A DNA stretch of 63,448 bases. Origin: Macrostomum lignano (taxonomy: Eukaryota). The stretch lies in the NCBI GenBank assembly GCA_002269645.1, contig NIVC01002048.1, forward strand, positions 107,826 through 171,273. Reading direction: 5' to 3'. Below the pieces are notes generated by a model. It was not told the DNA's origin. It did no database searches and saw only the letters and a program-made list of their open reading frames with translations. Below, in pieces: positions 34,701-62,865 of this stretch (its first letter is position 1; each line of letters starts with the position of its first letter). Position numbers and translations under genes: made by a program.

Positions 34701-37700
34701 TAACCTAACCTAACCTAAGGGAATTGTGCATGGTCCTAACCGGCCATGGTTCCTTCCAGAGACATATCTCGTTGCAAACCGGTTGCCCTCCCACCTGTCC
34801 CTTCTGTGGCATAGGAGAGGAGACTGCGGAGCATCACGTCACCTTCTGCCCTTACTTCAACAAGGCGCGGCACAAATATCTCGGCCTCCCCCAGCGGATG
34901 AACGAGTTGACCACCCCAGACAACATCCGTGACCTTTGCGCCTTCGTCCGGGATACCGGCCGGATGAGGGTCGCCGATGCCTCCACTGCGAACCTGCCGA
35001 CTACTGGCGGGGACTGGGCGCACCCTCAGGGTTAATCCTTGTGCTCTTTTACCTTGGGATTGCAATAGGACCTATTCGCGGCGCCTGCGCCCCCCGTCAG
35101 TAGTAAGTAAGTTAGTGACAACGACAGTGACCAGAGACAGAGTGACATTTGAGTGATATTAGCGTGGCATTTAAGTGCCAGATGGAGTGGAAGGAATTGG
35201 TAACAAATAAGTACTGGACAGAGTGACACTGAAGTACCAGTATGGAGTACATCGGAGTACCACTACAGAATGATGTTGGAACACAAGACGGAGTGACATT
35301 GGAGTACCAGTATGAAGTGACATTGGAGTAACAGTATGAAGTGACATTGGAGTAACAGTATGAAGTGACATTGGAGTAACAGTATGAAGTGACATTGGAG
35401 TACCAGTATGAAGTGACATTGGAGTAACAGTATGAAGTGACATTGGAGTACCAGTATGAAGTGACATTGGAGTAACAGTACGGAGTGAAATTGAATTGGA
35501 GTAACAGTACGGAGTGACACTGGAATACCAATCGGAGTGACATTAGTGACACAGCAATTTAAAACCAGTTTAGTAAGCAACAATGCTAAGTTAATAGCTC
35601 GTAAAGTGTCACGCTATGAACTTCAACTACCAATTTAAACAAAAAAGCACTAATTTAAATCAGCCCCACTCACCACCAAGTCCCTAGTCGCTGAGTTCAA
35701 TCGCTGAACAGTGCCCTCCATATCTGAGTAGCGATTGTGCAGTTCGCTTAATTCCTTCTCGTGCTCCAATTGCAATTTCTGCAGCTCAGAATTGTGAGAA
35801 GTTTTCAACGCTTCGACTTCAGCCTCGCGCTCTTTCAGCAACTCACTCGTGGCCTCATCAACCAGTCGTTTGGCGCGGGCCTCGCCTTCAGCAATCAGCT
35901 CTGCTTCTTTCTTTCGCCACTTTTCATCAAGATCTTTGGTGTAGGAGTCTTTGAATGTGTCGAAACTGCTCTTGAGGTAGGCGATCTGACTCTCCAGTTC
36001 TTTGCGCATCAGGGTGTACTTGGTCTCGGCTTCTTGGGCCTGGTTTATTAATTATTAATCAGCTTTTAGTTTAGTGAACATAAGTATTCGTTCAATATTC
36101 AGACACCAAGTTAACCGACTCAGATCCCACGTTCCCCTACTAAGATCCCACGTTCCCCTACTCAGATCCCACGTTCCCCTACTCAGATCCCACGTTCCCC
36201 TACTCAGATCCCACGTTACCCTACTCAGATCCCAAGCTACCCTACTCAGATCCCAAGTTCCTCCTAGTCAGATCCCAAGCTACCCTGACTCAGATCCCAA
36301 GCTACCCTACTCAGATTCTAAGCTACCCTACTCAGATTTTAAGCTACGGCCTACTCAGATCCCAAGCTACCCTACTCAGATCCCAAGCTACCCTACCCAG
36401 ATCCGAAGCTACCCTACTCAGATCCTAAGCTACCCTACCCAGATCCCAAGCTACCCTACCCAGATCCCAAGCTACCCTACCCAGATCTTAAGCTACCTAC
36501 TACTCAGGTAAAAAACCGCATACTCAGATTCAAATCTCCCTCCACTCAGATTCCAACTCCCAAGCTCATTATCATTTTCTTATTCTCAACAAAACTTCTC
36601 ACCTGCTCCTGTCTCTCCTTCTCGACCTGTTGCACAGCAGTCTGATGCTGGGCCAGCAGGTCAATGATCCGACCCTCGTGAGCCTGAGACTGAGCCTCGA
36701 GTTTTTCTTGCATCTCAGCCGTTAGGGCTTCGATCTCTTCTCGACGTTTGAGTCGCTCTTCTTCTAGCATGACAACCAAAGAGTCCAGGTGTTTCTGCAT
36801 CTGACCGACTAAAGCATCGCGCTGTGCCTCTTCAACAGTTCGGCTCTGCTTCGCCACTGTTTCGGCTTTCTGTTGCCTGGCTGTGAACAGCTGATCGGAG
36901 TCCAGGGTTACCAGGACTCGGTCTCGCGAACGGGTCAACTGGAAGCCCGGGCCAAGCTGGAAAGTCCGGCTAGCTGGAGGCTGGAAGAGTGAGAGATAAA
37001 GCTTGGGATTAAATACGATCAATCTCGTACGTCATTCTATTTAAAAGTTTGTCATAGTCTTGCAGTAACAGTGTCAACGAAAATAAAAGGTAACGGTTTT
37101 TCCACATGGAAAAAATTTTTATGTTTAAACACCATTTAACCATCACCTGTAACAACGTAATTCTCCCTCATTTCTTGAACATTCCAATCCTGTCAATCGC
37201 ATCAGATCTTGTCTTCCAAATGATCTTCCCTGTCATGAACTCAACCCCTTTGAATGGCTCTTCAGATGGAAAAAAATAATGGAATCCGCTGTCGCTAGAT
37301 CTGACAAGTTGCCGCAGAATCTTTCCGGACAACCATTCGTGCGATCCAGAAAAATTACATGCTTACATGTAGCTCCCATCACCCTGTCTTACCGCCGTCT
37401 TAGGCAGAGCAGATTCTTCACTTGTGGGCACCTCTCCGAGTTGCTGCTGCTGGTGCTGCTGCTGGTGCTGCTGGTGCCTCAAAGGCAGCGAAGCTGTGGC
37501 ACAATGCCTTCTAACCGGCTCGGACACAACCAGCAAACTCGGCGTCACTAGTCCTGCCAAATAATTAGCCGGCTTCTCGCTTGGCGCGGTTTTCACGCGA
37601 TGGCGCGTATCTGACCAGGCGGCGCGCACCGGTGTTCGTCTGTTGATGCAAGCGAACGAAGAGGACAATTTGGCGTCCGCCAGCGCGTTTGATGCTGTCG

Positions 37701-37784: not shown

Positions 37785-39090
37785 TCGGTGCTGACAGTGT
37801 CTTGTGTCACCATTGGTCACTGGTTTGTGCTGACAGTGTCTTGTGTGACCATTTGTCACTGGTTTGTGCTGACAGTGTCTTGTGTGACCATTGACTGATT
37901 TGTGCTGACAGTGTCTTGTGTGACCATTTGTCACTGGTTTGTACTGACAGTGTCTTGTGTGACCATTTGTCACTGGTTTGTGCTGACAGTGTCTTGTGTG
38001 ACCATTTGTCACTGGTTTGTGCTGACAGTGTCTTGTGTGACCATTTGTCACTGGTTTGTGCTGACAGTGTCTTGTGTGACCATTTGTCACTGGTTTGTGC
38101 TGACAGTGTCTTGTGTCACCATTGACTGATTTGTGCTGACAGTGTCTTGTGTCACCAGTGACTGATTTGTGCTTGACAGTGTCTTGTGTCACCATTGACT
38201 GATTTGTGCTGACAGTGTCTTGTGTCAACATTGGTCACTGGTTTGTGCTGACAGTGTCTTGTGTCACCATTGACTGATTTGTGCTGACAGTGTCTTGTGT
38301 CACCATTGGTCACTGGTTTGTGCTGACAGTGTCTTGTGTGACCATTTGTCACTGGTTTGTGCTGACAGTGTCTTGTGTCAACATTGGTCACTGGTTTGTG
38401 CTGACAGTGTCTTGTGTCACCATTGACTGATTTGTGCTGACAGTGTCTTGTGTCACCATTGACTGATTTGTGCTTGACAGTGTCTTGTGTCATCATTGGT
38501 CACTGGTTTGTGCTGACAGTGTCTTGTGTGACCATTTGTCACTGGTTTGTGCTGACAGTGTCTTGTGTCAACATTGGTCACTGGTTTGTGCTGACAGTGT
38601 CTTGTGTCACCATTGACTGATTTGTGCTTGACAGTGTCTTGTGTCACCATTGACTGATTTGTGCTGACAGTGTCTTGTGTCACCATTGACTGATTTGTGC
38701 TGACAGTGTCTTGTGTCACCATTCACTGATTTGTGCTTGACAGTGTCTTGTGTCACCATTGACTGATTTGTGCTTGACAGTGTCTTGTGTCACCATTGAC
38801 TGATTTGTGCTGACAGTGTCTTGTGTCACCATTGACTGATTTGTGCTGACAGTGTCTTGTGTCACCATTCTGACTGACAGTGTCTTGTGTCACCATTGAT
38901 TTGTGCTTGACAGTGTCTTGTGTCACCATTGACTGATTTGTGCTTGACAGTGTCTTGTGTCACCATTGACTGATTTGTGCTGACAGTGTCTTGTGTCACC
39001 ATTGACTGATTTGTGCTGACAGTGTCTTGTGTCACCATTCACTGATTTGTGCTTGACAGTGTCTTGTGTCACCATTGACTGATTTGTCCT
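37785..39090. repeat. 26-31-bp minisatellite, same family and orientation as 32300-33668
   Basis: Same gctgacagtgtcttgtgtcaccatt core. Confidence 0.96.
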
Positions 39091-39987
39091 GACAAAGTAT
39101 TGACTTGATAGTGTCCTTGAGTTTTGACCAAATCTTCTGGTTTCAATTTTTTTAGAACTTCAAAATGAAATTCAACTGCAATTAACTCGTATTGCACTAA
39201 TAAAAACACATCGCAATTAACCTAAAAACTAAATTCAGTATTAACTTTGGACATCAAAAGTAAAATCTTATGGTGATGCTGAAACTAAAACTATGATATC
39301 ATCCTTAAGCTATTACACAAGACGCAGAAATTAAAAACATTTTGATACGCGTTTAGTTTTCAAAAACAGTGAAAAGCAAATAAATTTGTTGATTTATTGC
39401 AATGTAAAATAGCATTGACTTGAAACTATAATTATTATTGTCAAAATTAAATTTCTCACACACGAACGACTGAAGTAAAAGGACGGTAGCTACTAAACAA
39501 AAAGCTCTGTGAATATAGGAATATAGGAATGGCAAGCCATAACATAAGATGAACATTGCGCCTGCTTCCTATCAAAATCAACAATTTTTGTCCTGAGAAA
39601 ATGTAAAGCTCCATTCTCCGTAATGTTTTTTTCCGGTAAAACCGGCCTCCTAAAAATTTCTAAGAAATGTAGGTTCCAGTCCTATTTTCTTGAGTAGTTC
39701 TTGGAGCAGACTAAATGCACTAGCGATACGACAAATATGCCTTCTTTTCCGATCTGCAGCTCATTTGTTAGAAAACAGAGTCAAGAGTCCTTCTACTTCA
39801 GTTGTCCATGGTCTCAAATCGCTAGAGCAAACGATTTTTTAATTACAAGTTTAAATGGTTTAGCAAGAAAGTTCAGAAGTGAACTTCTATAGTGAACGAT
39901 AGCAAAAACAGTATTTTTGACTAAAAATATAAAAAAATGTCTGTGAATATTCAAAATGATTCGTGCAGATTGGCTTGACCAGACGCA

Positions 39988-51043: not shown

Positions 51044-53008
51044 ATGGCTAATAACAGGTATAGATTTGTTAGATTGAATGCCTGGCAAGCTACATATCAG
51101 TCGTCCTCTTCATCGGAACCGGATCAAAGGCTTGAACGCATCGATCAAACTTTTCCGGCAAGTGACGTTCCATGCGCATCAACCAGATTTCAATGCGGTC
51201 AAAATTCTGCGAGAACCTCGCGTAACACTGACGCCACAGAATTTCAACTATTATTTAATCAATTACTAGCAATTGCAACTGACGGATTGTCCAGGCAGAG
51301 GGTCTTGCACTCTGACACTCAGCCCGAACAGTTAAAGTCTTTTAGTTCTCGATCACAGACTGGCAAGTGCAAGAAGTTGCGCTACTACAAAAGCAGAAGC
51401 ACATCTGACGGCAGAGTTTCGCCTGTGCCGCAGACTCTGGACTTCCGCAATCAGCGATGGGACACGAGTGGAATGCCGGCCTCGATTCCCCAACACCTGT
51501 GGGACATGAAACGAGAAGAGAACAGGTGGCAGTCTTTCCATCTGCCAGATGCCAGCTTTACAGCGGCTCACCTGGTGTCAGTGACGGATCTGGCTGCTGA
51601 CGGATTCTTCTACCTCCAGGAGACGGACAGAGTCAAGTGTGCATTCTGCAAGGGTGTGCTCAAGGGCTGGAAGGCTGGCGAACAGGTCCGAGAGGCTCAC
51701 AGACGCCACTTCTCCACCTGTCCGTTTGTGCTATTCGTCGAGGTCGGCAACGTGCCTCGAGAGCACAGGGAGCCGGAAGGAGCCTCGAGGTCAGCAAAGC
51801 TGGTCGAGGCAGTGCAGTGCAGTGATCAGATCATAGATGAAGCCGTAGTGATGGTGAACGGAGACTGGAGCATGAAGCTGGTCGCTGAGCTTCCACCGAT
51901 TGAGGCCGCTGGGCTGAAAGAGTGGGCGCTGGCGACACGAGGACTTTGTAGTCCAACCTCTGCTGGTGCAGTACGCGTTGTTGATGACGAGCTGGTCGCA
52001 GTCGACCTGATAAAGCATCCTCAGCTACCAGTGTCGAGCGAGGTAGCGAGATCTGCGTGCTCCGAGAGAGCGCTCAGGGAACTGTCTGCTCTCCAGCACA
52101 GTCTTGAAAGTGAGCCATCGAGTGTGACTGCCAAACACGCAGATTTCGAGAGCTACCAAACGAGGTCGCAGTCTCTGCACTCGGCTTTCGTTCAGCAGCC
52201 AGTGTACTTGCTTGCAAAGGCGGGCTTCTTCTACTCGAAAGCCGAGAGAGCGACCTGCTGCTTCAGCTGTGGACTTCGCGTTAACGACTGGAGCTGCAGC
52301 GATGATGTGTGGATTGAGCACGCTAGATGGTCGCCTCGCTGTCCTCATGTGTTGTTGGAACGAGGCAGCGACTTTGTGCGGACAGTGCACCGACTGTCAC
52401 CTCCCGTGCAGCACCCGACTTGTGCTGCCTCAGCTCGGCGTCGCACTGCACTGGTGCAGTCGGGCTCAACTGTATCAGCTAGTTTTGCGACTGTCGACGA
52501 GTCCGTTGCCCCTACTGCAGTCCGCAGCAGTCGCGTAGACCAGTCTCTCGCAGTCACACCTGGAGTCGAGTTCAGAGTCGAGGCCAAAGACATCAATGCC
52601 AGAGCCGACCTGCCCGTTTTGAGACTGCTCACTCAGCTCGGATTTTCTGCTCTGCAAGTGAAACTGTTCACAGAGCTGCATCTCAGACAGCGAGGCGATG
52701 ACTTTGCAACATCGGAGCTGTTCCTCGACTTCATGCTCTCCGAGAGCCGCCGCATGCGCAAGCAGTCGCAGGATCCGGAGGCGTTCTTCGAGAGCAGGAT
52801 GTCTCAGATTCGGGAGTCACTGAACCAACAGCCGAGACACCGAGACACAATCGACTGGAAGACGTGCAAGGTGTGCATGGACAATGAGGTGAACGTCATG
52901 CTTCTGGACTGTGGTCATTTAAACATTTGCTCTCCTTGTGCCAACTCTGTGACCAGCTGCCCCATTTGCACAGCCTACATACGCGGTACTGTGTTGATCA
53001 AGATTTAG
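51044..53008 (+). CDS. Inhibitor of apoptosis protein (IAP/BIRC family): BIR-BIR-UBA-RING, single uninterrupted ORF, about 654 aa
   Basis: Two BIRs with Cx2Cx16Hx6C (CAFC..AHRRHFSTC; CFSC..EHARWSPRC), an IAP-type UBA (LRLLTQLGFSALQVK..RGDDF) and a C-terminal C3HC4 RING (CKVC..CGH..CSPC..CPIC). The first ATG is at 51044; the track start at 50912 is a non-ATG codon. Confidence 0.95.
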   Translation: MANNRYRFVRLNAWQATYQSSSSSEPDQRLERIDQTFPASDVPCASTRFQCGQNSARTSRNTDATEFQLLFNQLLAIATDGLSRQRVLHSDTQPEQLKSFSSRSQTGKCKKLRYYKSRSTSDGRVSPVPQTLDFRNQRWDTSGMPASIPQHLWDMKREENRWQSFHLPDASFTAAHLVSVTDLAADGFFYLQETDRVKCAFCKGVLKGWKAGEQVREAHRRHFSTCPFVLFVEVGNVPREHREPEGASRSAKLVEAVQCSDQIIDEAVVMVNGDWSMKLVAELPPIEAAGLKEWALATRGLCSPTSAGAVRVVDDELVAVDLIKHPQLPVSSEVARSACSERALRELSALQHSLESEPSSVTAKHADFESYQTRSQSLHSAFVQQPVYLLAKAGFFYSKAERATCCFSCGLRVNDWSCSDDVWIEHARWSPRCPHVLLERGSDFVRTVHRLSPPVQHPTCAASARRRTALVQSGSTVSASFATVDESVAPTAVRSSRVDQSLAVTPGVEFRVEAKDINARADLPVLRLLTQLGFSALQVKLFTELHLRQRGDDFATSELFLDFMLSESRRMRKQSQDPEAFFESRMSQIRESLNQQPRHRDTIDWKTCKVCMDNEVNVMLLDCGHLNICSPCANSVTSCPICTAYIRGTVLIKI

Positions 53009-53980: not shown

Positions 53981-55558
53981 ATGAATTCGGAAACCTCTTC
54001 TGACACTGAGCTGTGCGTCATCTGCGGCGAACCGGCTCTAGGCTTGGGTCCGTTCTCTCGCTGCCAACTGTGCGATCATCACCTCAAAATTGATTTAGCG
54101 GACGCCTACAAGCTGCAACAGTCTGTTGCTGATGAACTCGACGCCTACTCGCAAGATGTCGCTAATGACTTGGCGGTGGAATCTGACGAACTTGAAAAAC
54201 ACCTGCTGGAGGTTCAGCTGACGCTCGCCTCTGTACAGCGAGACGTGCAAGAGTACTGTACCCGATTGGCGGAGCAGTATCGGAAGCGCCTTGAGGCTGT
54301 TCACGTTTGCCAGCGGAACCTCGAGGATGTCTGCAGCTACACCGAGGAGGTGGCCGCAGCGGAGAAGGCGGACAGCATTGCCGAGGTGGTTCAGCTGGCC
54401 GAATCCATGCAGCTGTCGCTTCCAGATTTGAAGTCGGACTTTGAAGTTGCGAAGCGACTGCGTTCGAAGGCCGACGGCGCCGAGCTGCAGTTGCGACGCC
54501 TTCGGCAGCTCAAGCGACTGGTTGGCAACGCGCTAGCTGGCGCCGAGTTGATAGACGTTGCGACGGACACTTCGAGTGACTCTGAATCCGCAGTGGTGCC
54601 ACTGAGAAAAAACTATTATCCTACCACAGATTCAAAGAGGCATGAGATTAATAAATCGACTGGTTCGATTATAATTACTCATATAGTGGAGCCAGACGGC
54701 TGGGTGCACTGGCTGGACGTGTGCAGCGACACCAGCGGATTCGTTGCTAACCGTTCAGGTCGCATTGTACCCGCCGAGTCAGCTGATTTTGGTAGTGAAG
54801 CTCTGTCCCAACAGTGTGTGTTTGCAGTCCTGTCTGACAAAGAGTATTTGTTTGTCTTTTCGATGCATAGTTCGCGGTGTTTCCGATGCTATTGTCCGAT
54901 TAATTGGAGAAAGCTTGTCTGGGGTCTGCACTGCGACCGTCAGCAGTTGTTCATCGCTCAGCCAGATGTAGTGACTGTAGCAGACCTGAGCGGTCGGATT
55001 CGTTTTCAAATTAAGACAGACGTGAACAACTTTGGAGACGTCTGGGGCATCGGCGGCAACGCAGCCTTCGTGTTTGTATCCAGCGGCAACAAGATTGCTG
55101 CATTCGACAAGTTGCGATTCGAATTCCAGTTCATCATTACGCTGAGGGAATTCCCCGACGCAGACTTGTACAACATGACATGCCTGCATGACTGCATTCT
55201 TGTGGCTGACAAGCATCACAACATGGTGCACCGAGTGTCCATTGAAAACAGACAGCTCGTGACATCCTTTCCGATTAAGGGTGCTAGCGGCATGGCTCAG
55301 TTTACTTATCCGTACGATGTGGTCGTCGACAGCAGAGGCCGCCTGTTCGTCAGCGAATTCCGCAGTCACTCAGTGCGAGTGGTGGACGCTGAAAGCGGCT
55401 CACTGCTGCAGACCCTAGGAGTGCCGGGCGAGAGCGGCAGCGGAGACGGCAAATTCTGCTGTCCATGCGGTCTAGCGGTGCTGACAGGAGGCACGCGCGA
55501 CCAGCTGATGGTAGCTGATCGCAATAATAAGCGACTTCTAGTATTCAACATCGGGTGA
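53981..55558 (+). CDS. TRIM-NHL-like protein: degenerate N-terminal Zn finger, coiled coil and NHL beta-propeller; no RING; about 525 aa; uninterrupted ORF
   Basis: CVICx12CQLCDHH, a helical E/L/Q-rich middle region, and NHL blades QFTYPYDVVVDSRGRLFVSEFRSHSVRV and GKFCCPCGLAV..LMVADRNNKRLLVF. First ATG at 53981. Confidence 0.85.
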   Translation: MNSETSSDTELCVICGEPALGLGPFSRCQLCDHHLKIDLADAYKLQQSVADELDAYSQDVANDLAVESDELEKHLLEVQLTLASVQRDVQEYCTRLAEQYRKRLEAVHVCQRNLEDVCSYTEEVAAAEKADSIAEVVQLAESMQLSLPDLKSDFEVAKRLRSKADGAELQLRRLRQLKRLVGNALAGAELIDVATDTSSDSESAVVPLRKNYYPTTDSKRHEINKSTGSIIITHIVEPDGWVHWLDVCSDTSGFVANRSGRIVPAESADFGSEALSQQCVFAVLSDKEYLFVFSMHSSRCFRCYCPINWRKLVWGLHCDRQQLFIAQPDVVTVADLSGRIRFQIKTDVNNFGDVWGIGGNAAFVFVSSGNKIAAFDKLRFEFQFIITLREFPDADLYNMTCLHDCILVADKHHNMVHRVSIENRQLVTSFPIKGASGMAQFTYPYDVVVDSRGRLFVSEFRSHSVRVVDAESGSLLQTLGVPGESGSGDGKFCCPCGLAVLTGGTRDQLMVADRNNKRLLVFNIG

Positions 55559-56185: not shown

Positions 56186-57345
56186 AGGGCCGCTGTACAC
56201 TCCTGTGTGAGTGTGTGCCTGCGTACGTATCCGCGCGCTTGTATGCCTGCTCAGGGGAGTCGGCAGAATGGGCAGTAATGCCTCTCGCCGGTTGTGTGCC
56301 TATGTCGCTTAAAGTGCGCCAGGGTGCACACAATCTAATAAAAAAACCGCACAAAAGTAAAAAAATCAGCCAAAGTGCCAATTGTTTATTATAGCTAGCT
56401 ACATGTAGATAAACATGACCGTTAGTAAACAGGGATTTGTCTCGGTAAGTAAAAACGGGGGAGACCATCGATCCAGTCAGATATATTAGCCAATAATTGA
56501 GCATAATTGAGCATTGAGTTTTAACTTTACAATAATAAATATAGCTCGCATAGCCGTAGCTAAATATAAGACGAATACAATTTTTACAGTAAATAGACCA
56601 CAACACATTCGATGGAATTAACAACAGAAATACGCATCTATAGCAATCAGTGAATTTTTTCAATCAACGATTTAAACGACTTTAAGATATTTTAAGGCAT
56701 TGACATAATTCATCGACTTTAGACAAAATTTTGTTACAACTCGAAAATGAGGCTATATAAGGGGACGTTATCGAAAACCGAAATTATCATGCTAGCTAAT
56801 TAGTAACAACTAGAAAATTTGAAAACAGTGTGAAATTTGTAAAAATCTGAAAAGATTGAAAGTAAAAACAAGGAATTCACATTAAATAAAAAATAGCTAG
56901 CTAATCAAAATGTGCTAGCAATCCCGAAGGATATCCCAATGAAAGACCCTCTGTTAGGGAGAAACAAATTAATTTTAATTAGGAAGTTTTCAGTCCAAGG
57001 GACTGATGTGGTCGCCACACACCCTCACTAACCCAAGCTGTTGCTGGCACCCATTTTACAATTGAATTATAAATATCTTTACAGTACTTGTGGGGTCCCA
57101 GTTGCTGATTAACAATGAATTTACATAGCGAATTGCGTAAAACGCCATATTGCAAGCCTGAAAATCTGGCCACTGGACAAGATTTTTTATTTTAAACGTT
57201 TCTGGTGGGCAGTTGTGCGTTAAGCCTAAGCTACATTTTTTTGTTTTTTTCAGGCTAAAATGTCAATATAATGTGGCAGTTAAACTCATGGACAACTACA
57301 ATGCTCTTAAAAAGACGCTGCACACTCCTATAATCAATAGCTAGA

Positions 57346-58231
57346 CTAGTCAATTGACTGGTATCGAAAAGAATCCTTAAACCAGACGTCACCTCTCAGT
57401 TGGTTAATCTCAGAGGGCAAGTTAAATATTGGTTCGAATTCCGGACCGTAGGCAAAAAACGGACGCCTGCCCAGCTCGTGTCTGACCATATTTAGCATGG
57501 CGCACAGATGGCTCCTTTCGTAGTTCCTTCTGATCACATTGCACAGGGTTTGAATGTACGGGCTGCCTTTATCTGTGATCCGGATTGCCTTATCACCCTT
57601 GGTGACAGCGTACGCGATGAGAAAGTCCATTTTGCTTGAACTGACCCTGCCGTATTGGGAGCTACGGAGTAGCTGCACAGAACTTTGACTGCCGGAGGAA
57701 CTCCTTGAGCCTTCGATTATTCGACATCCCTGGATAAAGAACAGCTTCGGCTTATTCTGGAGCGATCTGCAGTCGTAGAACGGGCTTATGACGTCATCCA
57801 GCTCGACATAGTTGCCATCTGAGCCCAACACTTTATCGTATTTGCCGTGCGACATGATAAAGGCCACAAAGCAGTCAAATTTTGTGTGACGATCGCTGGT
57901 GGCGAGTTTCCGAACCAGAGCCAGAAGTTCGTTGGCGTTATTGTCTCTGTGCACCTGTACTTCAAAATTTAGCGTCTCTCTGAACAGGCTCTCCAGACGA
58001 TTAACATCCTGCTGCGAGCCAGTGCGAGTTTGAGAGTCGTCGACAAACTTCTCGTTGTTGATAATGAGGCAGATCCCGCGAGGCTTGCTGCGCATCGTGT
58101 ACTGATAGCCGCGTATCGGTGGCACCACACTTGAGTTCTGGCTCGAATAGTCCGGTTCGAATAGTTCAAAACGGCCTGAATGAGTACCTCCGAAATCGAA
58201 ATCAAGCCTGCGTCCTCTGCGCGCTGGTCTA
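57346..58231 (-). CDS. Caspase catalytic domain exon (p20+p10)
   Basis: YTMRSKPRGICLIINN, RTGSQQD (S1 Arg), FIMSHG (catalytic His), KPKLFFIQGCR (catalytic Cys), MDFLIAYA and AIR..GSPYIQTLC. Confidence 0.95.
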
Positions 58232-61200
58232 CTGGAGTAGGTAGTAGAAGTTTATTAAGCAATAGTAAACGACTTTAAAAGCCTCATTTCTATACGAGCT
58301 AGGGCCATTACCTTCGTTCAGCATAGAAAACACCATGCATTAATTAAAGATTTCCACATGTCAACTATCAAAACTTCTGCACAAACACAACTCTGCTTAG
58401 CAGTCTTCCATCCTTAGAAGGCTCAAGTTTACTAGTGTTGTACTACACTCAATGGCACGGTCACAATAATTTTTCAACTTATTAATTTTGAAGACACATT
58501 TTAAAGTCCAAACCTTGTTGGAGCTGCATGGGCTGCCCAGGTACGACGCTTCTGGCTATCGAGCTGCAGCAGCACCTCAGTTGCGGCTGTCCGATTTGCC
58601 CGCATAGCAAGTTCCATTGCGTCGCCTTGGGAGCTTCTGTGGTAGATACTGGCCCCGTAGTTAGCCAGCAGTTTCAGCATGTCCGCATGGCCCTTGACGG
58701 CCGCTAGGGTAAACGCAGTGTTGCGGTTTTTTCTAGAGCTTGTCTCCAGCTCTAAATTGGCGTTGCGTTTAATCAACAGTTCGGCAAGCTCTTGAAGATT
58801 CTCCTGGGCGCAAAAGTGCAAAGCGCTAAATCCATCTGCCTCCTGGTTGTTGACGCTGGCCCTTCTATCCAGCAGAAGTATGGCGATAGCCCGACGATTC
58901 AACCAGGCGGCTCGAATCAACGGAGTCCGGCTGTCGGAGCTCTTGGCGTTGATGTCAATGGATGTCTGGTCCAGTAGGATCTTAGCGACTCGGCGGCTGT
59001 CCTGCTGCACCGCGATGTGCAACGCCGTGACGCCCAGATCCTGCTGCGCGACGTTGGGATCCGCGCCTCGATCCAGCAGCAGCCTGCAGGTGGCCTCGTC
59101 ATCGTTCCAGGTGGCCGCCATCAGGACGGTCCAGCCCGGGTCCTGCCTAATCCGCTCGTTGATGCGTCGCTGTAGGGCGCCGCCGCTGGACTCGAGCAAG
59201 TAGCGCACCTTTCTCGTATTGCCGTCCATTGCAGCTTTGAAAACCTTCGATATGGTCAGCTCGTCGGTGTTTTGCGTCGATTTTGACCTGTTTGAAATAG
59301 ATTCGAGTAAATGGTGGTTTTTTGGGATAAGATGGGTATTTCAGCATCTTGGTCAAGGTCTTTGTACAGTAGTATATAAAGTCTTTTCATTTCAGCAGGC
59401 TCTAGTTGGTGGTTCAAAATATTTAAGTTCTATTTTTTAAACGGGGTCGCTTCACAAGCTCGAAATTTGACAACCTCGAAAATTTTAGCAGCCGACTTCA
59501 AAAGCTCGAAATTTCACAACCTCGAAACCAGTTACTTTCATAAGCTCGAAATTTCACAAGCTCGAAATTTCACAACCTCGAAACCATTTTAGCAGCTTGT
59601 GAAATTGCTTTCACAAGCTCAAAACAAAACGAAACACAAGCTTCACAAGGTTCTATGATTAAAACTACGGTCTATATGACTAAGCAATAAGGTAGGGTTA
59701 AAACTGGGTTCTATGGTAAAACTATGGTCTATGATTAAAACTAGGGTCTATGGTTAAAACTAGGGTCTATGATTAAAACTAGGTTCTATGGTAAAACTAT
59801 GGTCTATGATTAAAACTAGGGTCTATGGTTAAAACTAGGGTCTATGATTAAAACTAGGGTCTATGGTAAAACTATGGTCTATGATTAAAACTAGGTTCTA
59901 TGGTAAAACTATGGTCTATGATTAAAACTAGGGTCTATGGTTAAAACTAGGGTCTATGATTAAAACTTGGGTCTATGGTAAAACTATGTTCTATGGTTAA
60001 AGCTAGAGTCTATGGTTAAAACTAGCCAGAGTCAGAGCTGAACCATTGCAACTAACAACTCCACCGCGCTAGCCTGTATACAGTCTCACATGAGCTCCAA
60101 CACGACGTTAACCGCGTCTAACTGACGTGCCCGTTTGGCCTCGTCGCAGATCTGCGGCAGCCATTCGTTGCCGGCCCATTGAGCGTCCAACTGCAGAAGC
60201 CGTCTTAGCATTGGCCTCAGGACGTCGAGATGACCGCGGACAGCTGCGAGCTTGACCGGGCAGAGCGGACTGCCGTTGCGGCCGCCGCCGCCGCTGTTCA
60301 TCAACTTGTTGAAGCCTGCCCGGCTGACAAGCAACTTGACCAACGGCCTTGCCGAGTCGAAATCTGCGCAGAAATGAAGCGGCGTCGAACCCCAGGCGTC
60401 TCTTATGGACAGCTTGGCGCCGGCGTGCAGCAGCTGGCTGACGCAGGCCTCGCTCCCGGCTTGGACTGCCGCGTGCAGGGCGGTCGTCTGGCTGGAATTC
60501 GTCGACCGAAGATTGACGTGCAAACTGGCGTTACTGCTGCGATCTCTTCTGATTGCTTCTAGAAGCAGTTTTAGCGCTTCCGGTTTATCCAATCCAGCTG
60601 CAAGCATCAGCGGTGTCTGACCCGTTGTCCGGTCCATCGCGATCGCCTGATTGACGCCTTCGCCATCGTTCAGCAGGATGTTTCGAACTCGGTCGAGCCT
60701 GTCGCTTCGGATCGCTTTGATGAGGCTGAGTTGCTTGGATCGCTTTTGCCTATTTGTGGCGGTAAAAGGTGTAAATGAGGTCGTGCTGCTTGTTTTTAGA
60801 TTTAAGTTTTTACACTTCCTAGTGAACTCCACCAGGGCCTTTTGCCCCTTCCGTATTCTTTTCATCAGGAGGCTCCTTGATGATTGACTCACCTCCCGCC
60901 AACAACTCTCCAGCTCTTCAACAGGCTGAGCAGTTCAGGCGAAGCCGGCACGCCTGCCATTTTCACTTGGTCCAAAGCTGTGCAACCCTCGCTATTTACC
61001 AGATTTGGATCAGCGCCGCTCGCGTGCAGCAGTCGCAGCATCTCAACGTGACCATTCAGAGCAGCTAAAGCAAACGCTGTGCTACTCTTGAACTCTGGCC
61101 TGGCTGTCCGATTGACCAGTTCATGTGGCGCTTTAGCCAGAATGCGCTTAGCAATCTCGCGTCTGTCCAGCTGGGCGCAAAGGTGCAACGCGGTGAAGCC

Positions 61201-61755
61201 GCTCTTTGAGGCCAGGTCAAGCCTGGCGCCACGATCGATGAGCAGGCAAGCCAGCTGGACGCTGTTCTCAAACACCGACTTCATCAGAGCGGTGAATCCT
61301 TGCTGGCTACTCTGCTGGTTCAACTGGATGTTCCTCTGGTCCAGCAGCAGTTTTGCTAGTTCGATGTGACCAAAATCGACGCAGATCATCAATGCGGTGA
61401 CGTCATTCTTAGCCAACAAGTTCACATTGGCGCCAGCGTTCAACAGTAGTTTAGCGACGCTAAATAAATTCTGCCTGGCGCAGATGTGCAACGCGCCGAG
61501 CCCCGAGCTGTCGCGATGGTCCAGCGGAGACTTCAGTTCAGTCAGCAGCCGGCAGATGTTTACATTTTCGCCATTGGTTGAAGCCGCGGCAGCCATCAGT
61601 AGGCTCCTGTTGCGATCATTTTTGTTGATCCAGCCGGGTGACAAGCCCTCGCTAAGGTAGCCTCGAACTCTACTATAATCACCTTTTCCACAGGCTTCGT
61701 AAAGTTTGTAGTAGAGCCGTTCATTAGGTGCTTTGGATGCGGATGCAGCTGCCAT
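57346..61755 (-). CDS. Predicted ankyrin-repeat/caspase fusion protein (about 20 ANK repeats plus a C-terminal peptidase C14A domain), 4 exons, about 1060 aa
   Basis: Exons 61755-60893, 60749-60090, 59287-58514 and 58231-57346; every intron is phase 2 and the joins are in frame. Donors are AG|GTGAGT, AT|GTGAGA and AAG|GTTTGG (weak); acceptors are pyrimidine-rich (..cacaaatAG, ..tttcaaacAG, ..ctactccAG). The first two joins are strong; the third is plausible but less certain. Confidence 0.72.
58514..59287 (-). CDS. Ankyrin-repeat exon 3 (about 7 repeats)
   Basis: TVLMAA, TALHIA, TPLIRA, SALHFC and TAFTLA repeats. The track ATG at 59229 lies inside the first repeat (KVFKAAMDGN), which implies an upstream splice. 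Confidence 0.88.
59455..60025. repeat. Two adjacent minisatellites inside the ANK exon 2-3 intron
   Basis: gctcgaaatttcacaa-type units (59455-59640) followed by aaaactagggtctatg[a/g]tt-type units (59650-60025). Confidence 0.88.
60090..60749 (-). CDS. Ankyrin-repeat exon 2 (about 5-6 repeats)
   Basis: TPLMLAAG, TALHAAVQAG, TPLHFCAD and PVKLAAVRGH; bounded by an AG acceptor and a GTGAGA donor. Confidence 0.88.
60893..61755 (-). CDS. Ankyrin-repeat exon 1 (about 7-8 repeats)
   Basis: LYEACGKGD, GALHICA, TALMIC, TALMKS, TALHLCA and TAFALAALNGH; ends at a consensus AG|GTGAGT donor. Confidence 0.9.
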
Positions 61756-62180
61756 CTTCTGGTCTTGCAGTGCGCAACAACCCTAGCTAGTCTGATTGTT
61801 TAGTCAACAGCTAAGCAAAAATATGCGTGTAAGCTTGGTTAGTTTTCTTAACTTAGACCTTGGCTGCAAGTCTCTATACCGCGAGATAAAGTCAGAGATG
61901 TACGAATATAAATTTCTTGGAATTACTTGGCCCTGCAGCTAAGTCGACACTAACAGAGAGAGACAGGGAAAGAGAGAGAGCGAGTGAGCAAAAGCTACCC
62001 TGGTATTTACATGTCAATCGTAATAGCGTCGCATTTATACCGTTGCATTTGTATCGCTAGGCATATAGAAGTTCCCCTTTCTCAGTATTGCATGTACATG
62101 TATTGCTTGGAAATTCAAAGCATGATCTGCGATAGTTTATCAGTTAAATCAGCTTAACTATATACTTACAATGCGCAATT

Positions 62181-62447
<267 letters not shown>

Positions 62448-62865
62448 TTAATACAATTAGCATTAAAGTCATTAATCATTTTAACTGATACTGGGGCACA
62501 AGATGCAAACTGTAAATGTCTTTTACGATCGTGAGTACAACCTTTAGCTATGTTTATTTTGAAAGGAACTTCTGCTTGTAAATTTTGATTAGATTAAAAT
62601 TGTACTTTGAAATGTGTAGTTTATTCCTCGTGTTTTTAATTGATGTCAGCGCACTTCAATTTTGCTTTGCTATAATTTTTGTTTAACTTTTCATACCATT
62701 ATTAAAGTGATAACTTTTGGCCTAATCTGGATGAAACTCAGCTGCAATAGCTATTGATCTACTAGTTGACTAGGCTAAATTTAGCTCATTAGCTCACAGT
62801 GAGCGCACTATAGCTTGCAATCATGATGCTATATTTAGCTTTGGCCAAGTACTTTCTGTCCAGTC

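What the first reader, a model, noticed from the sequence alone, without database searches (positions are those of the whole stretch)
57346..61755. Three ankyrin ORFs and a caspase ORF splice into one ANK20-caspase protein of about 1060 aa
Each apparent stop sits just inside a donor (AG|GTGA, AT|GTGA) or shortly after one (AAG|GTTTGGACTTTAA). Each downstream ORF has a phase-2 acceptor, and the frames join without stops. The caspase frame is open for 45 codons upstream of its first ATG, which falls within the conserved Y-x-M start of p20. Animal initiator caspases normally use CARD/DED prodomains, so a large ankyrin array suggests a self-contained sensor-protease activated by ligand-induced clustering or release of autoinhibition. 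Candidate release sites LDFD and FEPD lie in the linker.
Basis: partly seen in the sequence, partly recalled or inferred. Interest (0 to 1): 0.88.

Follow-up and report, generated by a model that had tools for sequence, protein, structure and literature searches.

The report
Ankyrin-repeat caspase gene of Macrostomum flatworm
The four reading frames are very probably one four-exon gene of the free-living flatworm Macrostomum lignano, encoding about 21 ankyrin repeats fused to a caspase; this type of caspase was already described in parasitic flatworms but was reported absent from this species.

Summary
On the minus strand, four ORFs join through three GT..AG introns, all phase 2, into a stop-free 3183-nt CDS. 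The product is 1060 aa: three capped ankyrin modules (about 8+6+7 repeats), a roughly 45-residue disordered linker, and a complete caspase domain with its His/Cys dyad.

The window is Macrostomum lignano. UniProt A0A1I8I0Q1 matches the model at residues 1-1045 and uses the same three junctions, although it is otherwise a chimeric prediction.

The strongest support is a paralogue, PAA92194.1 (1067 aa). Its annotation method is transcript-based. It is collinear with the model at 62% identity and has the same four exons and phase-2 introns, including the unusual AAG|GTT donor before the caspase exon.

The 14 codons just upstream of the caspase's first ATG show 6 synonymous and 1 non-synonymous differences between the paralogues. 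Translation therefore starts further upstream, and neither this exon nor the spliced leader's terminal ATG supplies an in-frame start.

No RNA was checked for this locus itself.

ANK caspases are already published for parasitic flatworms and one annelid, so this is a new member of a known kind. It does contradict the published "absent in M. lignano / parasite-specific" statement. The mechanism is inferred.

The parts
60893..61755 (-). Exon 1: start codon at 61755 and ANK module 1 (about 8 repeats with N- and C-capping repeats; residues 1-287 plus 2 nt).
   Evidence: ORF. Pfam Ank hits. 68% identical to paralogue exon 1, omega 0.17. Ends at donor GAG|GTGAGT.
60750..60892 (-). Intron 1: 143 nt, phase 2, GTGAGT...AAATAG.
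   Evidence: GC is 43% against 54-60% in the flanking exons. Read through in the ORF2 frame it has no coding signal, LLR -4.3, against +28.7 for the first 37 codons of exon 2. UniProt A0A1I8I0Q1 uses the same junction. The paralogue has a phase-2 intron within 4 alignment columns.
60090..60749 (-). Exon 2: ANK module 2 (about 6 repeats; residues 288-507). Symmetric 2-2 phase.
   Evidence: 55% identical to the paralogue, omega 0.19.
59288..60089 (-). Intron 2: 802 nt, phase 2, GTGAGA...AAACAG. Carries minisatellites (16-nt unit at 59451-59583; 19/56/75-nt units at 59648-60025).
   Evidence: It is the only frame-preserving GT..AG pair. TRF results. The paralogue's intron falls in the identical alignment column. 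ORF3's own ATG lies inside the N-cap helix, and no in-frame ATG lies upstream of it.
58514..59287 (-). Exon 3: ANK module 3 (about 7 repeats; residues 508-765). Symmetric 2-2 phase.
   Evidence: 68% identical to the paralogue, omega 0.13. Aligns collinearly with the single ANK module of the Alitta virens ANK caspase.
58232..58513 (-). Intron 3: 282 nt, phase 2, AAG|GTTTGG...CTACTCCAG|T. Contains the read-through stop TAA at 58503-58501 and an AATAAA at 58256-58251.
   Evidence: GC is 36% against 58% and 53% in the flanking exon sequence. The paralogue has a phase-2 intron (166 nt) at the homologous position, with donor AAG|GTTAGA, which also has T at +3. A0A1I8I0Q1 uses the same junction. The introns themselves do not align.
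58096..58231 (-). Exon 4, first part: the disordered prodomain-to-protease linker (residues 766-811). Includes candidate cleavage sites LDFD (D778, codon 58197-58195) and FEPD (D793, codon 58152-58150), and the conserved block NSSVVPPIRGYQYT.
   Evidence: Composition is exon-like (GC 53%; LLR +11.6 against a non-coding mean of -36). The 14 codons before the Met show 6 synonymous and 1 non-synonymous changes against the paralogue. Both Asp residues align with Asp in the paralogue. pLDDT is below 50.
57349..58095 (-). Exon 4, second part: the caspase domain (p20 + p10; residues 812-1060). Key residues: His894 (57849-57847), Cys935 in QGCRI (57726-57724), Arg835 and Arg983 (P1-Asp pocket).
   Evidence: Pfam Peptidase_C14 E=2.4e-44. 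PDB caspase-7 1shj E=1.5e-27 over 249 residues. AlphaFold2 with a 91-sequence alignment gives pLDDT 83.8, and Foldseek's top hits are caspase-7/-3/-8 with TM(target) 0.85-0.91. Residue coordinates. Conserved columns.
57346..57348 (-). Stop codon TAG.
   Evidence: The C-terminus GDVWFKD... is shared with the paralogue. The UniProt model that splices away the last 15 residues is therefore wrong there.
57186..57191 (-). AATAAA, the likely poly(A) signal of the gene, about 155 nt after the stop codon.
   Evidence: Sequence signal only; not tested.

Best explanation
**What it is.** One four-exon gene of Macrostomum lignano encodes a 1060-aa 'ANK caspase'. It has three self-contained ankyrin solenoids, one per exon and about 21 repeats in total. 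These are followed by a roughly 45-residue flexible linker and a C-terminal caspase-8/-7-like protease domain with an intact His894/Cys935 dyad and an intact P1-Asp pocket.

**Shown here.**
- The exons join in frame.
- The same architecture and intron positions exist in a paralogue.
- Both halves, and the residues just upstream of the first ATG, are under purifying selection.
- The caspase fold is complete.

**Inferred mechanism.**
- The ankyrin array takes the place of a DED or CARD prodomain as the protein-interaction platform.
- Binding of the array to a partner or to an oligomeric scaffold brings two protease domains together. This is proximity-induced dimerisation, as in initiator caspases.
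- The activated enzyme then cuts after the conserved linker aspartates (LDFD778, FEPD793) and frees the protease from the array.
- This copy has no aspartate in its intersubunit linker other than the structural D968. It may therefore act as an uncleaved single chain.
For: **Gene model.**
- The CDS is stop-free at 3183 nt.
- Donors 1 and 2 are GTGAGT and GTGAGA. This matches the species motif GT[GA]AG and 7 of the 9 donors of the neighbouring transporter gene.
- There are sharp GC steps at every proposed boundary.
- Intron 1 has no coding signal.
- ORF2 and ORF3 lack usable start codons of their own.

**Identity and existing prediction.** UniProt A0A1I8I0Q1 (M. lignano) is identical to the model at residues 1-1045 and uses all three junctions.

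**Paralogue PAA92194.1/PAA51086.1 (1067 aa).**
- It is collinear with the model at 61.6% identity across all four exons.
- It has introns at the same or nearly the same columns, all phase 2.
- Its intron 3 donor is AAG|GTTAGA, against AAG|GTTTGG here.
- The published annotation of that assembly was built from RNA-seq and de novo transcripts and was cut at measured SL and poly(A) sites (PMC5730564).

**Selection.**
- Omega is 0.13-0.19 in the ANK exons.
- The 14 codons upstream of Met812 show 6 synonymous and 1 non-synonymous change.
- There is no in-frame ATG between acceptor 58231 and Met812.
- The spliced leader ends in ATG. Joined at 58231 it reads ATG|TAG, and no AG in the first 30 nt of the exon puts it in the caspase frame (sequence).

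**Protease.**

**Linker aspartates.** They align between the paralogues although the linker as a whole is unconstrained, omega 0.87.

**Precedent.** ANK caspases are published in flatworms and in a transcript-derived Alitta virens sequence that aligns collinearly with residues 525-1022.
Against: - No transcript, junction read or protein was seen for this locus. The exact 1060-aa product is not on record.
- The intron 3 donor GTTTGG is weak. It scores about 0 bits on a generic matrix and has T at +3 and +4, whereas all 9 transporter donors have G or A at +3.
- An in-frame TAA follows the donor after 11 nt. A canonical AATAAA sits 25 nt before the acceptor. The paralogue's intron 3 also holds an AATAAA (joint chance about 0.015 under simple shuffling).
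- The acceptor CTCCAG fits the species' trans-splice motif [T/C]TNCAG. [quoted passage not shown]
- A 29-nt ATG mini-exon (58340-58312, donor AAG|GTAATG) would also join 58231 in frame.
- Frame-specific coding potential of the linker is inconclusive: frame 0 scores 11.6 bits and frame 1 scores 16.9 bits.
- The pentapeptide is QGCRI rather than QACRG. The final Gly is conserved in at least 90% of relatives, so activity is not guaranteed.
- The activation mechanism is entirely inferred.
- That the specific paralogue model is RNA-derived rests on the published method and the locus-tag naming, not on reads I inspected.
Confidence: 0.85

Rival explanations
1. Two genes in an operon-like unit. An ANK-only gene ends at TAA 58501 and is polyadenylated after the AATAAA at 58256. 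The caspase exon then receives the spliced leader at 58231 and is translated from Met812 as a caspase without a prodomain.
For: - M. lignano trans-splices about 30% of its genes and has operons with intergenic distances of about 100 bp. The acceptor matches [T/C]TNCAG.
- An AATAAA lies 25 nt upstream of the acceptor, and one is also present in the paralogue's intron 3.
- No ATG in any frame lies between 58231 and 58095.
- The intron 3 cis donor is weak.
Against: - The 14 codons upstream of Met812 are protein-constrained, with 6 synonymous and 1 non-synonymous change. Under this model they would be untranslated.
- The SL's terminal ATG joins out of frame (ATG|TAG), and no nearby AG fixes this.
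- The paralogue is annotated as one ANK-caspase mRNA by a pipeline that cuts at measured SL and poly(A) sites.
- The AAG|GTT donor is conserved at the homologous position.
Confidence: 0.05
2. Two genes with separate promoters. The caspase is transcribed from within 'intron 3'. It starts at ATG 58340 in a 29-nt first coding exon (MHGVFYAER..) spliced at 58312/58231, giving a short-prodomain caspase of about 305 aa.
For: - ATG 58340 through donor AAG|GTAATG at 58312 is in phase 2 and joins 58231 in frame.
- This donor resembles a donor that is actually used in the transporter gene, AAG|GTAACG. It scores better than GTTTGG on a generic matrix (my own calculation).
Against: - The Kozak context is poor (T at -3), and three upstream ATGs lie in the candidate 5' region.
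- The mini-exon has no coding signal.
- The intron does not align with the paralogue's intron, so the mini-exon is not conserved.
- A promoter would have to sit within about 160 nt of the ANK stop codon and inside the ANK 3'UTR.
- The paralogue and the UniProt model both join exon 3 to exon 4.
Confidence: 0.04
3. The gene makes both forms. One is the full-length ANK-caspase. The other is an ANK-only isoform produced by intron 3 retention or intronic polyadenylation (..APTRFGL*), possibly acting as a decoy or regulator of the full-length protein. This rival does not exclude the best explanation.
For: - A weak donor is followed at once by a stop codon, then by an AATAAA 245 nt later.
- An AATAAA occurs in intron 3 of both paralogues, with a joint chance of about 0.015 under simple shuffling.
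- All introns are phase 2, so exon skipping also stays in frame.
Against: - In the paralogue the AATAAA lies inside the 44-codon read-through frame, ahead of its stop. No clean ANK-only product is conserved.
- Mononucleotide shuffling understates A/T runs in AT-rich introns.
- There are no expression data.
Confidence: 0.2
4. The locus is a decaying copy. The weak third donor no longer works, and the caspase exon is an unexpressed relic.
For: - GTTTGG is the poorest of the donors examined.
- The QACRG motif has degenerated to QGCRI.
- The M. lignano genome is highly duplicated.
Against: - All four exons are intact, with no frameshift or stop.
- Omega is 0.13-0.19 in the ANK exons. Non-synonymous divergence in the caspase exon (pN 0.30) is far below its saturated synonymous divergence (pS 0.75).
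- Catalytic and P1-pocket residues are kept.
- The paralogue has QACRP, so loss of the last Gly predates the duplication and has persisted in both copies.
Confidence: 0.03

Closest known systems
ANK caspases of parasitic flatworms (e.g. Schistosoma mansoni XP_018647858.1, Echinococcus granulosus KAH9278879.1). Named in Horkan et al. 2024, PMC11463336, which credits Lee et al. 2014 with the first description in Schistosoma.
   Same: An N-terminal ankyrin-repeat prodomain replaces DED or CARD, followed by a C-terminal caspase domain. Same phylum. In that paper the caspase domain is placed near DED (caspase-8-like) caspases, as are this protein's best named hits.
   Different: That class was reported as restricted to parasitic species and as not detected in M. 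lignano. This gene comes from a free-living, early-branching flatworm. I could not obtain neodermatan sequences, so common descent is untested. None appeared among the 120 best word-indexed caspase hits.
M. lignano paralogues PAA92194.1 / PAA51086.1 (BOX15_Mlig008053g1 / Mlig008805g1; 'hypothetical protein').
   Same: Three ANK modules plus linker plus caspase, 1067 against 1060 aa, 61.6% identity. Same four exons and phase-2 introns. Same conserved NSSVVPPIRGYQY block and aligned linker aspartates.
   Different: An old duplicate: synonymous sites are saturated (dS 1.2-2) and the introns do not align. The paralogue has Asp sites in its intersubunit linker (SNVD, SNFD) and in-frame Met codons in the linker; this copy has neither. 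No shared neighbouring genes within 6 kb.
Alitta virens ANK caspase (Trinity transcript c83651_g1_i1, 522 aa; supplement of bioRxiv 10.1101/2023.12.11.571055).
   Same: The order ANK module, then a roughly 50-aa linker, then Y-x-M caspase is collinear with residues 525-1022 here (BLASTP 99.8 bits). It is transcript-derived, so the architecture is real in at least one animal.
   Different: It has one ANK module of about 6 repeats, not three. Identity is only 26%, no closer than unrelated caspases. The authors regard it as convergent.
Caspase-8 / DED initiator caspases, and caspase-7/-3 (solved structures).
   Same: Complete p20/p10 fold. Y-x-M-x-x-K-P-R-G start resembling caspase-8. His/Cys dyad and Arg/Gln/Arg P1 pocket. 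Foldseek TM(target) 0.85-0.91 to caspase-7/-3/-8.
   Different: No DED or CARD. QGCRI in place of QACQG/QACRG. No Asp cleavage site in the intersubunit linker.
Other ANK-bearing caspases among the nearest relatives. M. lignano: P0320 (ANK+caspase, 723 aa), PAA47029.1 (ANK+kinase+caspase), A0A1I8GZ94 (kinase+ANK+caspase). Tick Haemaphysalis longicornis: XP_077551368.1 / XP_077535275.1 (Mind-bomb SH3 + ANK, with or without RING, + caspase).
   Same: Ankyrin repeats lie N-terminal to a caspase domain in one polypeptide. 12 of the 51 long relatives have this arrangement.
   Different: They carry additional domains (kinase, RING, Mib-SH3) and have different exon structures (P0320). Caspase domains are only 31-39% identical, so these are probably separate fusions or old divergences.
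UniProt A0A1I8I0Q1 (M. lignano, 2049 aa, 'ANK_REP_REGION domain-containing protein').
   Same: It is this locus. It matches the model at residues 1-1045 and uses the same three junctions.
   Different: It lacks a start Met and splices away the last 15 caspase residues. It then runs on through antisense ORFs of the neighbouring NHL and IAP genes, coiled-coil exons and the transporter's 5' exon. It is a chimeric prediction.

Membership tests
Caspase (Peptidase_C14, clan CD) | Significant match to the family profile across both p20 and p10. | tested here: met
   PF00656 E=2.4e-44, 152 bits against a cut-off of 21.4, profile positions 1-212 of 233. Caspase-7 1shj E=1.5e-27 over query residues 40-288.
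Caspase (Peptidase_C14, clan CD) | Catalytic His (SHG) and Cys (QxCxx) dyad. | tested here: met
   His894 in MSHG and Cys935 in QGCRI fall in the nearly invariant columns H128/G129 and Q167/C169 of a 91-sequence alignment.
Caspase (Peptidase_C14, clan CD) | P1-aspartate pocket (equivalents of Arg179, Gln283, Arg341). | tested here: met
   Arg835 falls in invariant column R69. Gln933 and Arg983 fall in nearly invariant columns Q167 and R217.
Caspase (Peptidase_C14, clan CD) | Canonical QAC(R/Q/G)G pentapeptide. | tested here: not met
   The pentapeptide is QGCRI. The last Gly is conserved in at least 90% of 91 relatives. The paralogue has QACRP. The consequence for activity is unknown.
Caspase (Peptidase_C14, clan CD) | Caspase fold. 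| tested here: met
   AlphaFold2 model with alignment: pLDDT 83.8, core above 90. Foldseek PDB top 50 are all caspases, E about 1e-24, TM(target) up to 0.91.
Caspase (Peptidase_C14, clan CD) | Asp-directed protease activity. | not testable with these tools
   Needs recombinant enzyme and substrates.
ANK caspases (Horkan et al. 2024) | Ankyrin repeats and a caspase domain in the same polypeptide, with ANK N-terminal. | tested here: met
   In-frame gene model. The same junctions in A0A1I8I0Q1, and a paralogue with the same architecture and intron positions. Coding constraint upstream of the first ATG. Caveat: no RNA evidence for this locus itself.
ANK caspases (Horkan et al. 2024) | Caspase domain belongs to the monophyletic platyhelminth ANK-caspase clade. 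| not tested
   Neodermatan sequences could not be retrieved. Indirect hint: the paper places an M. lignano kinase-caspase as sister to that clade, and M. lignano kinase-caspases found here also carry ANK repeats.
ANK caspases (Horkan et al. 2024) | Restricted to parasitic flatworms, as the class was described. | tested here: not met
   The source is free-living M. lignano. The paper's Table S1 lists ANK caspase as N/A for this species. This contradicts the stated distribution, not the architecture.
DED/CARD initiator caspases | Death-fold prodomain (DED or CARD). | tested here: not met
   No DED, CARD or Death Pfam hit at E<=0.01 anywhere in the 1060 aa.
SL trans-spliced downstream cistron (rival) | Upstream poly(A) signal plus a [T/C]TNCAG acceptor. 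| tested here: met
   AATAAA at 58256-58251 and CTCCAG|T at 58231.
SL trans-spliced downstream cistron (rival) | The downstream ORF can be initiated after the acceptor, from its own AUG or the SL's AUG, and covers all conserved coding sequence. | tested here: not met
   The first AUG is Met812, but the 14 codons before it are constrained. The SL ATG is out of frame at every AG in the first 30 nt.
SL trans-spliced downstream cistron (rival) | SL-containing reads at the acceptor. | not testable with these tools
   No read data available here.

The most novel reading that the evidence does not exclude
Ankyrin-prodomain caspases may not be an invention of parasitic flatworms. They may date back at least to the common ancestor of Macrostomorpha and Neodermata. 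In Macrostomum they would then have diversified into a small family: triple-module ANK, single-module ANK, ANK+kinase and kinase+ANK caspases. Such a family could act as self-contained sensor or adaptor death proteases, replacing the DED/FADD route that these flatworms lack. The two conserved linker aspartates would serve as release sites.
Probability: 0.3. Interest if true: 0.55.

Novelty: new member of a known kind. Interest (0 to 1): 0.38.

Why it matters
- **It corrects a published distribution.** The only survey of these proteins states that ANK caspases arose with parasitism and are absent from free-living flatworms, M. lignano included. This locus, its 62%-identical paralogue pair and at least three further ANK-bearing caspase genes of the same species show otherwise.
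- **It gives access to an experimental model.** M. lignano supports transgenesis and RNAi. The unknown activation route of ANK caspases, which has been proposed as a drug-target pathway in schistosomes and tapeworms, could therefore be studied in a free-living laboratory animal.
- **It corrects a database entry.** The UniProt entry for this locus is a 2049-aa chimera, and the true product is 1060 aa.

Tried and rejected
- **Word-indexed homologue searches.** Searches with the caspase, and with the last ANK repeats plus caspase, gave at most 38% identity and no ANK-bearing hit. Taken alone, this wrongly suggested an orphan. The top hit (Notodromas) scored high only because it has two caspase domains.
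- **Exact-product look-ups.** Look-ups of the single ORFs, the neighbours and the full model found nothing.
- **Species identification from the transporter.** The neighbouring monoamine transporter identified only a bilaterian.
- **Frame-specific coding potential of the linker.** This was inconclusive, because two frames are open and score alike.
- **Generic splice matrices.** Taken alone, these argued against junction 3. I had put the fusion at about 50% until the exhaustive search found the paralogue.
- **Intron 3 alignment between paralogues.** Nothing is conserved, so neither the ATG mini-exon nor the AATAAA can be called conserved by position.
- **AlphaFold2 of the full protein without an alignment.** The model was unusable (pLDDT 38.6) and served only for a rough helix-pair count.
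- **Retrieving neodermatan ANK-caspase sequences.** Attempts to get them from the paper's supplement failed.
- **P0320 as a structural comparison.** This third M. lignano ANK caspase has a different exon structure and says nothing about junction 3.
- **Other scans.** Rfam and tRNA scans of the window found nothing.

Full report
**What is in the sequence**

The minus strand between 61755 and 57346 carries four long ORFs of 288, 268, 242 and 260 aa. Joining 61755-60893, 60749-60090, 59287-58514 and 58231-57346 gives 3183 nt with no internal stop, hence 1060 aa.

The first two ORFs end in a TGA that is part of the donor itself (GAG|GTGAGT and CAT|GTGAGA). The third ends at a TAA 11 nt after AAG|GTTTGG. 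All three acceptors are phase 2, and the introns are 143, 802 and 282 nt.

Pfam finds ankyrin families across residues 1-760 and Peptidase_C14 at 817-1020 with E=2.4e-44.

The ankyrin part is not one long array. It is three self-contained modules, one per exon, each with an N-cap-like and a C-cap-like repeat. I count about 8+6+7 repeats, and that count is approximate.

**How good are the splice signals alone?**

- GC falls from 54-60% in the exons to 36-43% in the proposed introns, with sharp steps at every boundary, including 58231.
- Junction 2 is the only frame-preserving GT..AG pair available. ORF3's own ATG lies inside the first capping helix, with no in-frame ATG upstream.
- Junction 1 has seven in-frame options that share one strong donor. 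The stretch removed has no coding signal, LLR -4.3 against +28.7 for the next 37 codons.
- I reconstructed nine introns of the neighbouring monoamine-transporter gene. Seven of the nine donors are GTGAG, and all nine have G or A at +3. That matches the first two donors here.
- It does not match the third donor, GTTTGG. On a generic matrix that donor scores about zero.

Several further features weaken junction 3 when it is judged alone:
- A phase-compatible GT near the end of an ORF is not rare by chance.
- An AATAAA lies 25 nt before the acceptor.
- A 29-nt ATG mini-exon inside 'intron 3' would also join 58231 in frame.
- The frame-specific coding score of the 45 linker codons is inconclusive.

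On the sequence alone, the ANK-to-caspase junction, the crux of the finding, was roughly a coin toss.

**Related sequences settle it**

The word-indexed protein searches found nothing closer than 38% identity. The exhaustive HMMER search with the linker plus caspase found two decisive proteins.

The first is P0261, which is UniProt A0A1I8I0Q1 of Macrostomum lignano.
- It is identical to the model from residue 1 to residue 1045.
- The window is therefore from M. lignano, a free-living macrostomorph flatworm.
- An existing prediction uses exactly the three proposed junctions.
- That entry is otherwise a chimera. It cuts off the last 15 caspase residues and continues through antisense ORFs of the neighbouring genes. 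It shows only that a gene finder made the same choices.

The second is P0262, which is PAA92194.1 (1067 aa, same species; near-duplicate PAA51086.1 at 97% identity).
- It is collinear with the model over its whole length at 61.6% identity. By exon the identities are 68, 55, 68 and 55%.
- I mapped its CDS exactly onto its contig (L001). It has four exons and three phase-2 introns.
- Intron 2 lies in the identical alignment column. Introns 1 and 3 lie within 2-4 columns, in gapped linker regions.
- Its intron 3 donor is AAG|GTTAGA, again with T at +3.
- Nucleotide similarity between the two loci is confined to the exons.

The published annotation of that assembly was built from StringTie/TACO assemblies of RNA-seq plus a de novo transcriptome. 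It was cut at experimentally mapped spliced-leader and poly(A) sites, with ORFs called by TransDecoder (PMC5730564). The paralogue's single ANK-caspase ORF is therefore, by method, transcript-derived. I did not see the reads themselves.

**Selection analysis**

| Region | Result |
|---|---|
| ANK exons | omega 0.13-0.19 |
| Synonymous sites | saturated; dS 1.2-2 in the ANK exons, pS 0.75 in the caspase exon |
| Linker residues 767-797 | omega 0.87 |
| 14 codons before the first ATG (NSSVVPPIRGYQYT) | 6 synonymous, 1 non-synonymous difference |

Those 14 codons are therefore translated. In this copy there is no in-frame ATG between the acceptor and Met812.

The M. lignano spliced leader ends in ATG. 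Joined at 58231 it reads ATG|TAG, and none of the AG dinucleotides in the first 30 nt of the exon would put it in the caspase frame. The exon must therefore receive coding sequence from upstream in cis. Exon 3 is the source used by the paralogue and by the UniProt model.

I put the single-gene reading at about 0.85. The remainder is divided among an operon/SL arrangement, an internal promoter with the mini-exon, and a decaying copy.

An additional ANK-only isoform made by intron retention or intronic polyadenylation cannot be excluded. It is hinted at by an AATAAA in intron 3 of both paralogues, with a joint chance of about 0.015 under simple shuffling. In the paralogue, however, that signal lies inside a 44-codon read-through frame, so no clean product is conserved.

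**The protease**

- The domain aligns with caspase-7 over 249 residues (E=1.5e-27) and with caspase-8.
- An AlphaFold2 model built with 91 homologues is confident (pLDDT 83.8, core above 90). Foldseek returns only caspases, with TM(target) up to 0.91.
- His894, Cys935, Arg835, Gln933 and Arg983 are in place.
- The pentapeptide is QGCRI. The final Gly, conserved in at least 90% of relatives, is replaced here and also in the paralogue (QACRP).
- The first 40 residues of exon 4 are predicted to be disordered.
The second site keeps Glu at P3.
- This copy has no aspartate in the intersubunit linker apart from the structural D968. The paralogue has two.

**Likely mechanism (inferred, not shown)**

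The three ankyrin solenoids replace a death-fold prodomain as the recruitment surface. Partner-driven proximity dimerises the caspase-8-like domain. The active enzyme then cuts the linker aspartates and releases itself. Autoinhibition by the array is an equally untested variant.

**Comparison with what is known**

'ANK caspases' are a published class. They were named by Horkan et al. 2024, who credit their first description in Schistosoma to Lee et al. 2014 (PMC11463336).

That paper describes them as restricted to parasitic flatworms, plus one annelid transcript from Alitta virens. It lists ANK caspase as not detected in M. lignano. The A. virens sequence, taken from the preprint's supplement, aligns collinearly with residues 525-1022 here, but at only 26% identity.

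Among the 150 closest cluster representatives of this caspase domain, 51 are at least 550 aa long. Twelve of those carry ankyrin repeats, about as many as carry DED (11). They include:
- three further M. lignano gene families: ANK+caspase of 723 aa, ANK+kinase+caspase, and kinase+ANK+caspase;
- tick proteins with Mind-bomb SH3 + ANK, with or without RING, + caspase.

The architecture is thus neither unique nor parasite-specific. I could not test whether the Macrostomum genes share ancestry with the neodermatan clade, because no neodermatan sequences could be retrieved. One hint is that the paper places an M. lignano kinase-caspase as sister to that clade.

**Verdict**

- The structural interpretation is supported with good but indirect evidence.
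- The mechanistic interpretation is untested.
- The finding is a new member of a known kind. It is of moderate interest because it corrects the published distribution and a chimeric database entry, and because it places the family in a genetically tractable flatworm.

Noticed in passing
window 51044-53008 (+): A single-exon ORF encodes an inhibitor-of-apoptosis protein, with two BIR domains (E=5e-27) and a C-terminal RING. It lies about 4.3 kb beyond the 3' end of the caspase gene, on the opposite strand (convergent). A caspase regulator next to a caspase gene may or may not be meaningful. No IAP lies within 6 kb of the paralogue.
   Followed up: partly
window 53981-55558 (+): A single-exon 525-aa ORF with an N-terminal Cys-rich (B-box/RING-like) stretch and only a weak NHL-repeat hit (E=1.7e-6). 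It lies between the IAP gene and the caspase gene. Function unknown.
   Followed up: partly
window 5015-22057 (-): A monoamine (dopamine/noradrenaline-type) SLC6 transporter gene with at least 10 exons. The N-terminal core is up to 90% identical to insect and vertebrate transporters. Its introns (81 nt to 7.9 kb) are filled with micro- and minisatellites. Seven of its nine reconstructed donors are GTGAG.
   Followed up: yes
whole minus strand of the window (UniProt A0A1I8I0Q1): The public 2049-aa model for this locus is a chimera. After caspase residue 1045 it uses a false donor (AGAG|GTGACG near 57391). It then strings together antisense ORFs of the NHL gene (54779-55369) and the IAP gene (52025-52390), coiled-coil exons, and the 5' exon of the transporter.
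   Followed up: yes
window 31775-32227, 35650-36009, 36546-37022 (-): Exons of a coiled-coil protein with no Pfam match. They are separated by 39-nt-unit minisatellites (32300-33669 and 37788-39094).
   Followed up: no
window 6026-7523, 16544-19056, 19478-20730, 22395-24140, 26636-28621, 62183-62448 and others: The load of tandem repeats is very heavy. Examples are (AATC)375, a 14-nt unit repeated 180 times, (TATC)437, (GACA)497 and (CTGT)68. These create most of the long spurious ORFs in the window and the large GC/AT skews in the composition profile.
   Followed up: partly
window 58256-58251 and L001 about 10394-10399: Intron 3 of both ANK-caspase paralogues contains a canonical AATAAA, 25 and 69 nt before the acceptor. 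Introns 1 and 2 of the window gene contain none. The joint chance is about 0.015 under mononucleotide shuffling. This may be coincidence in AT-rich sequence or a signal for an ANK-only isoform.
   Followed up: partly
window 57724-57732; P0262 residues about 930-934: Both paralogues have lost the last glycine of the caspase QACRG pentapeptide (QGCRI here, QACRP in the paralogue). The change is therefore old and tolerated. Its effect on the active-site loop is unknown.
   Followed up: partly
window 61760-61815 (-), upstream of the start codon: Several acceptor-like sites precede the ATG (TTTTTGCTTAG|C, AATCAG|A, ACCAG|AAGATGG). At the last site, the spliced leader's terminal ATG would be in frame with the ORF. 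The gene's 5' end may itself be SL trans-spliced.
   Followed up: no
L002 (M. lignano contig NIVC01002653.1), gene 1001-14295: A third M. lignano ANK+caspase gene (723 aa). It has a different, more fragmented exon structure, including an intron inside the caspase domain. The public model starts without a Met.
   Followed up: partly
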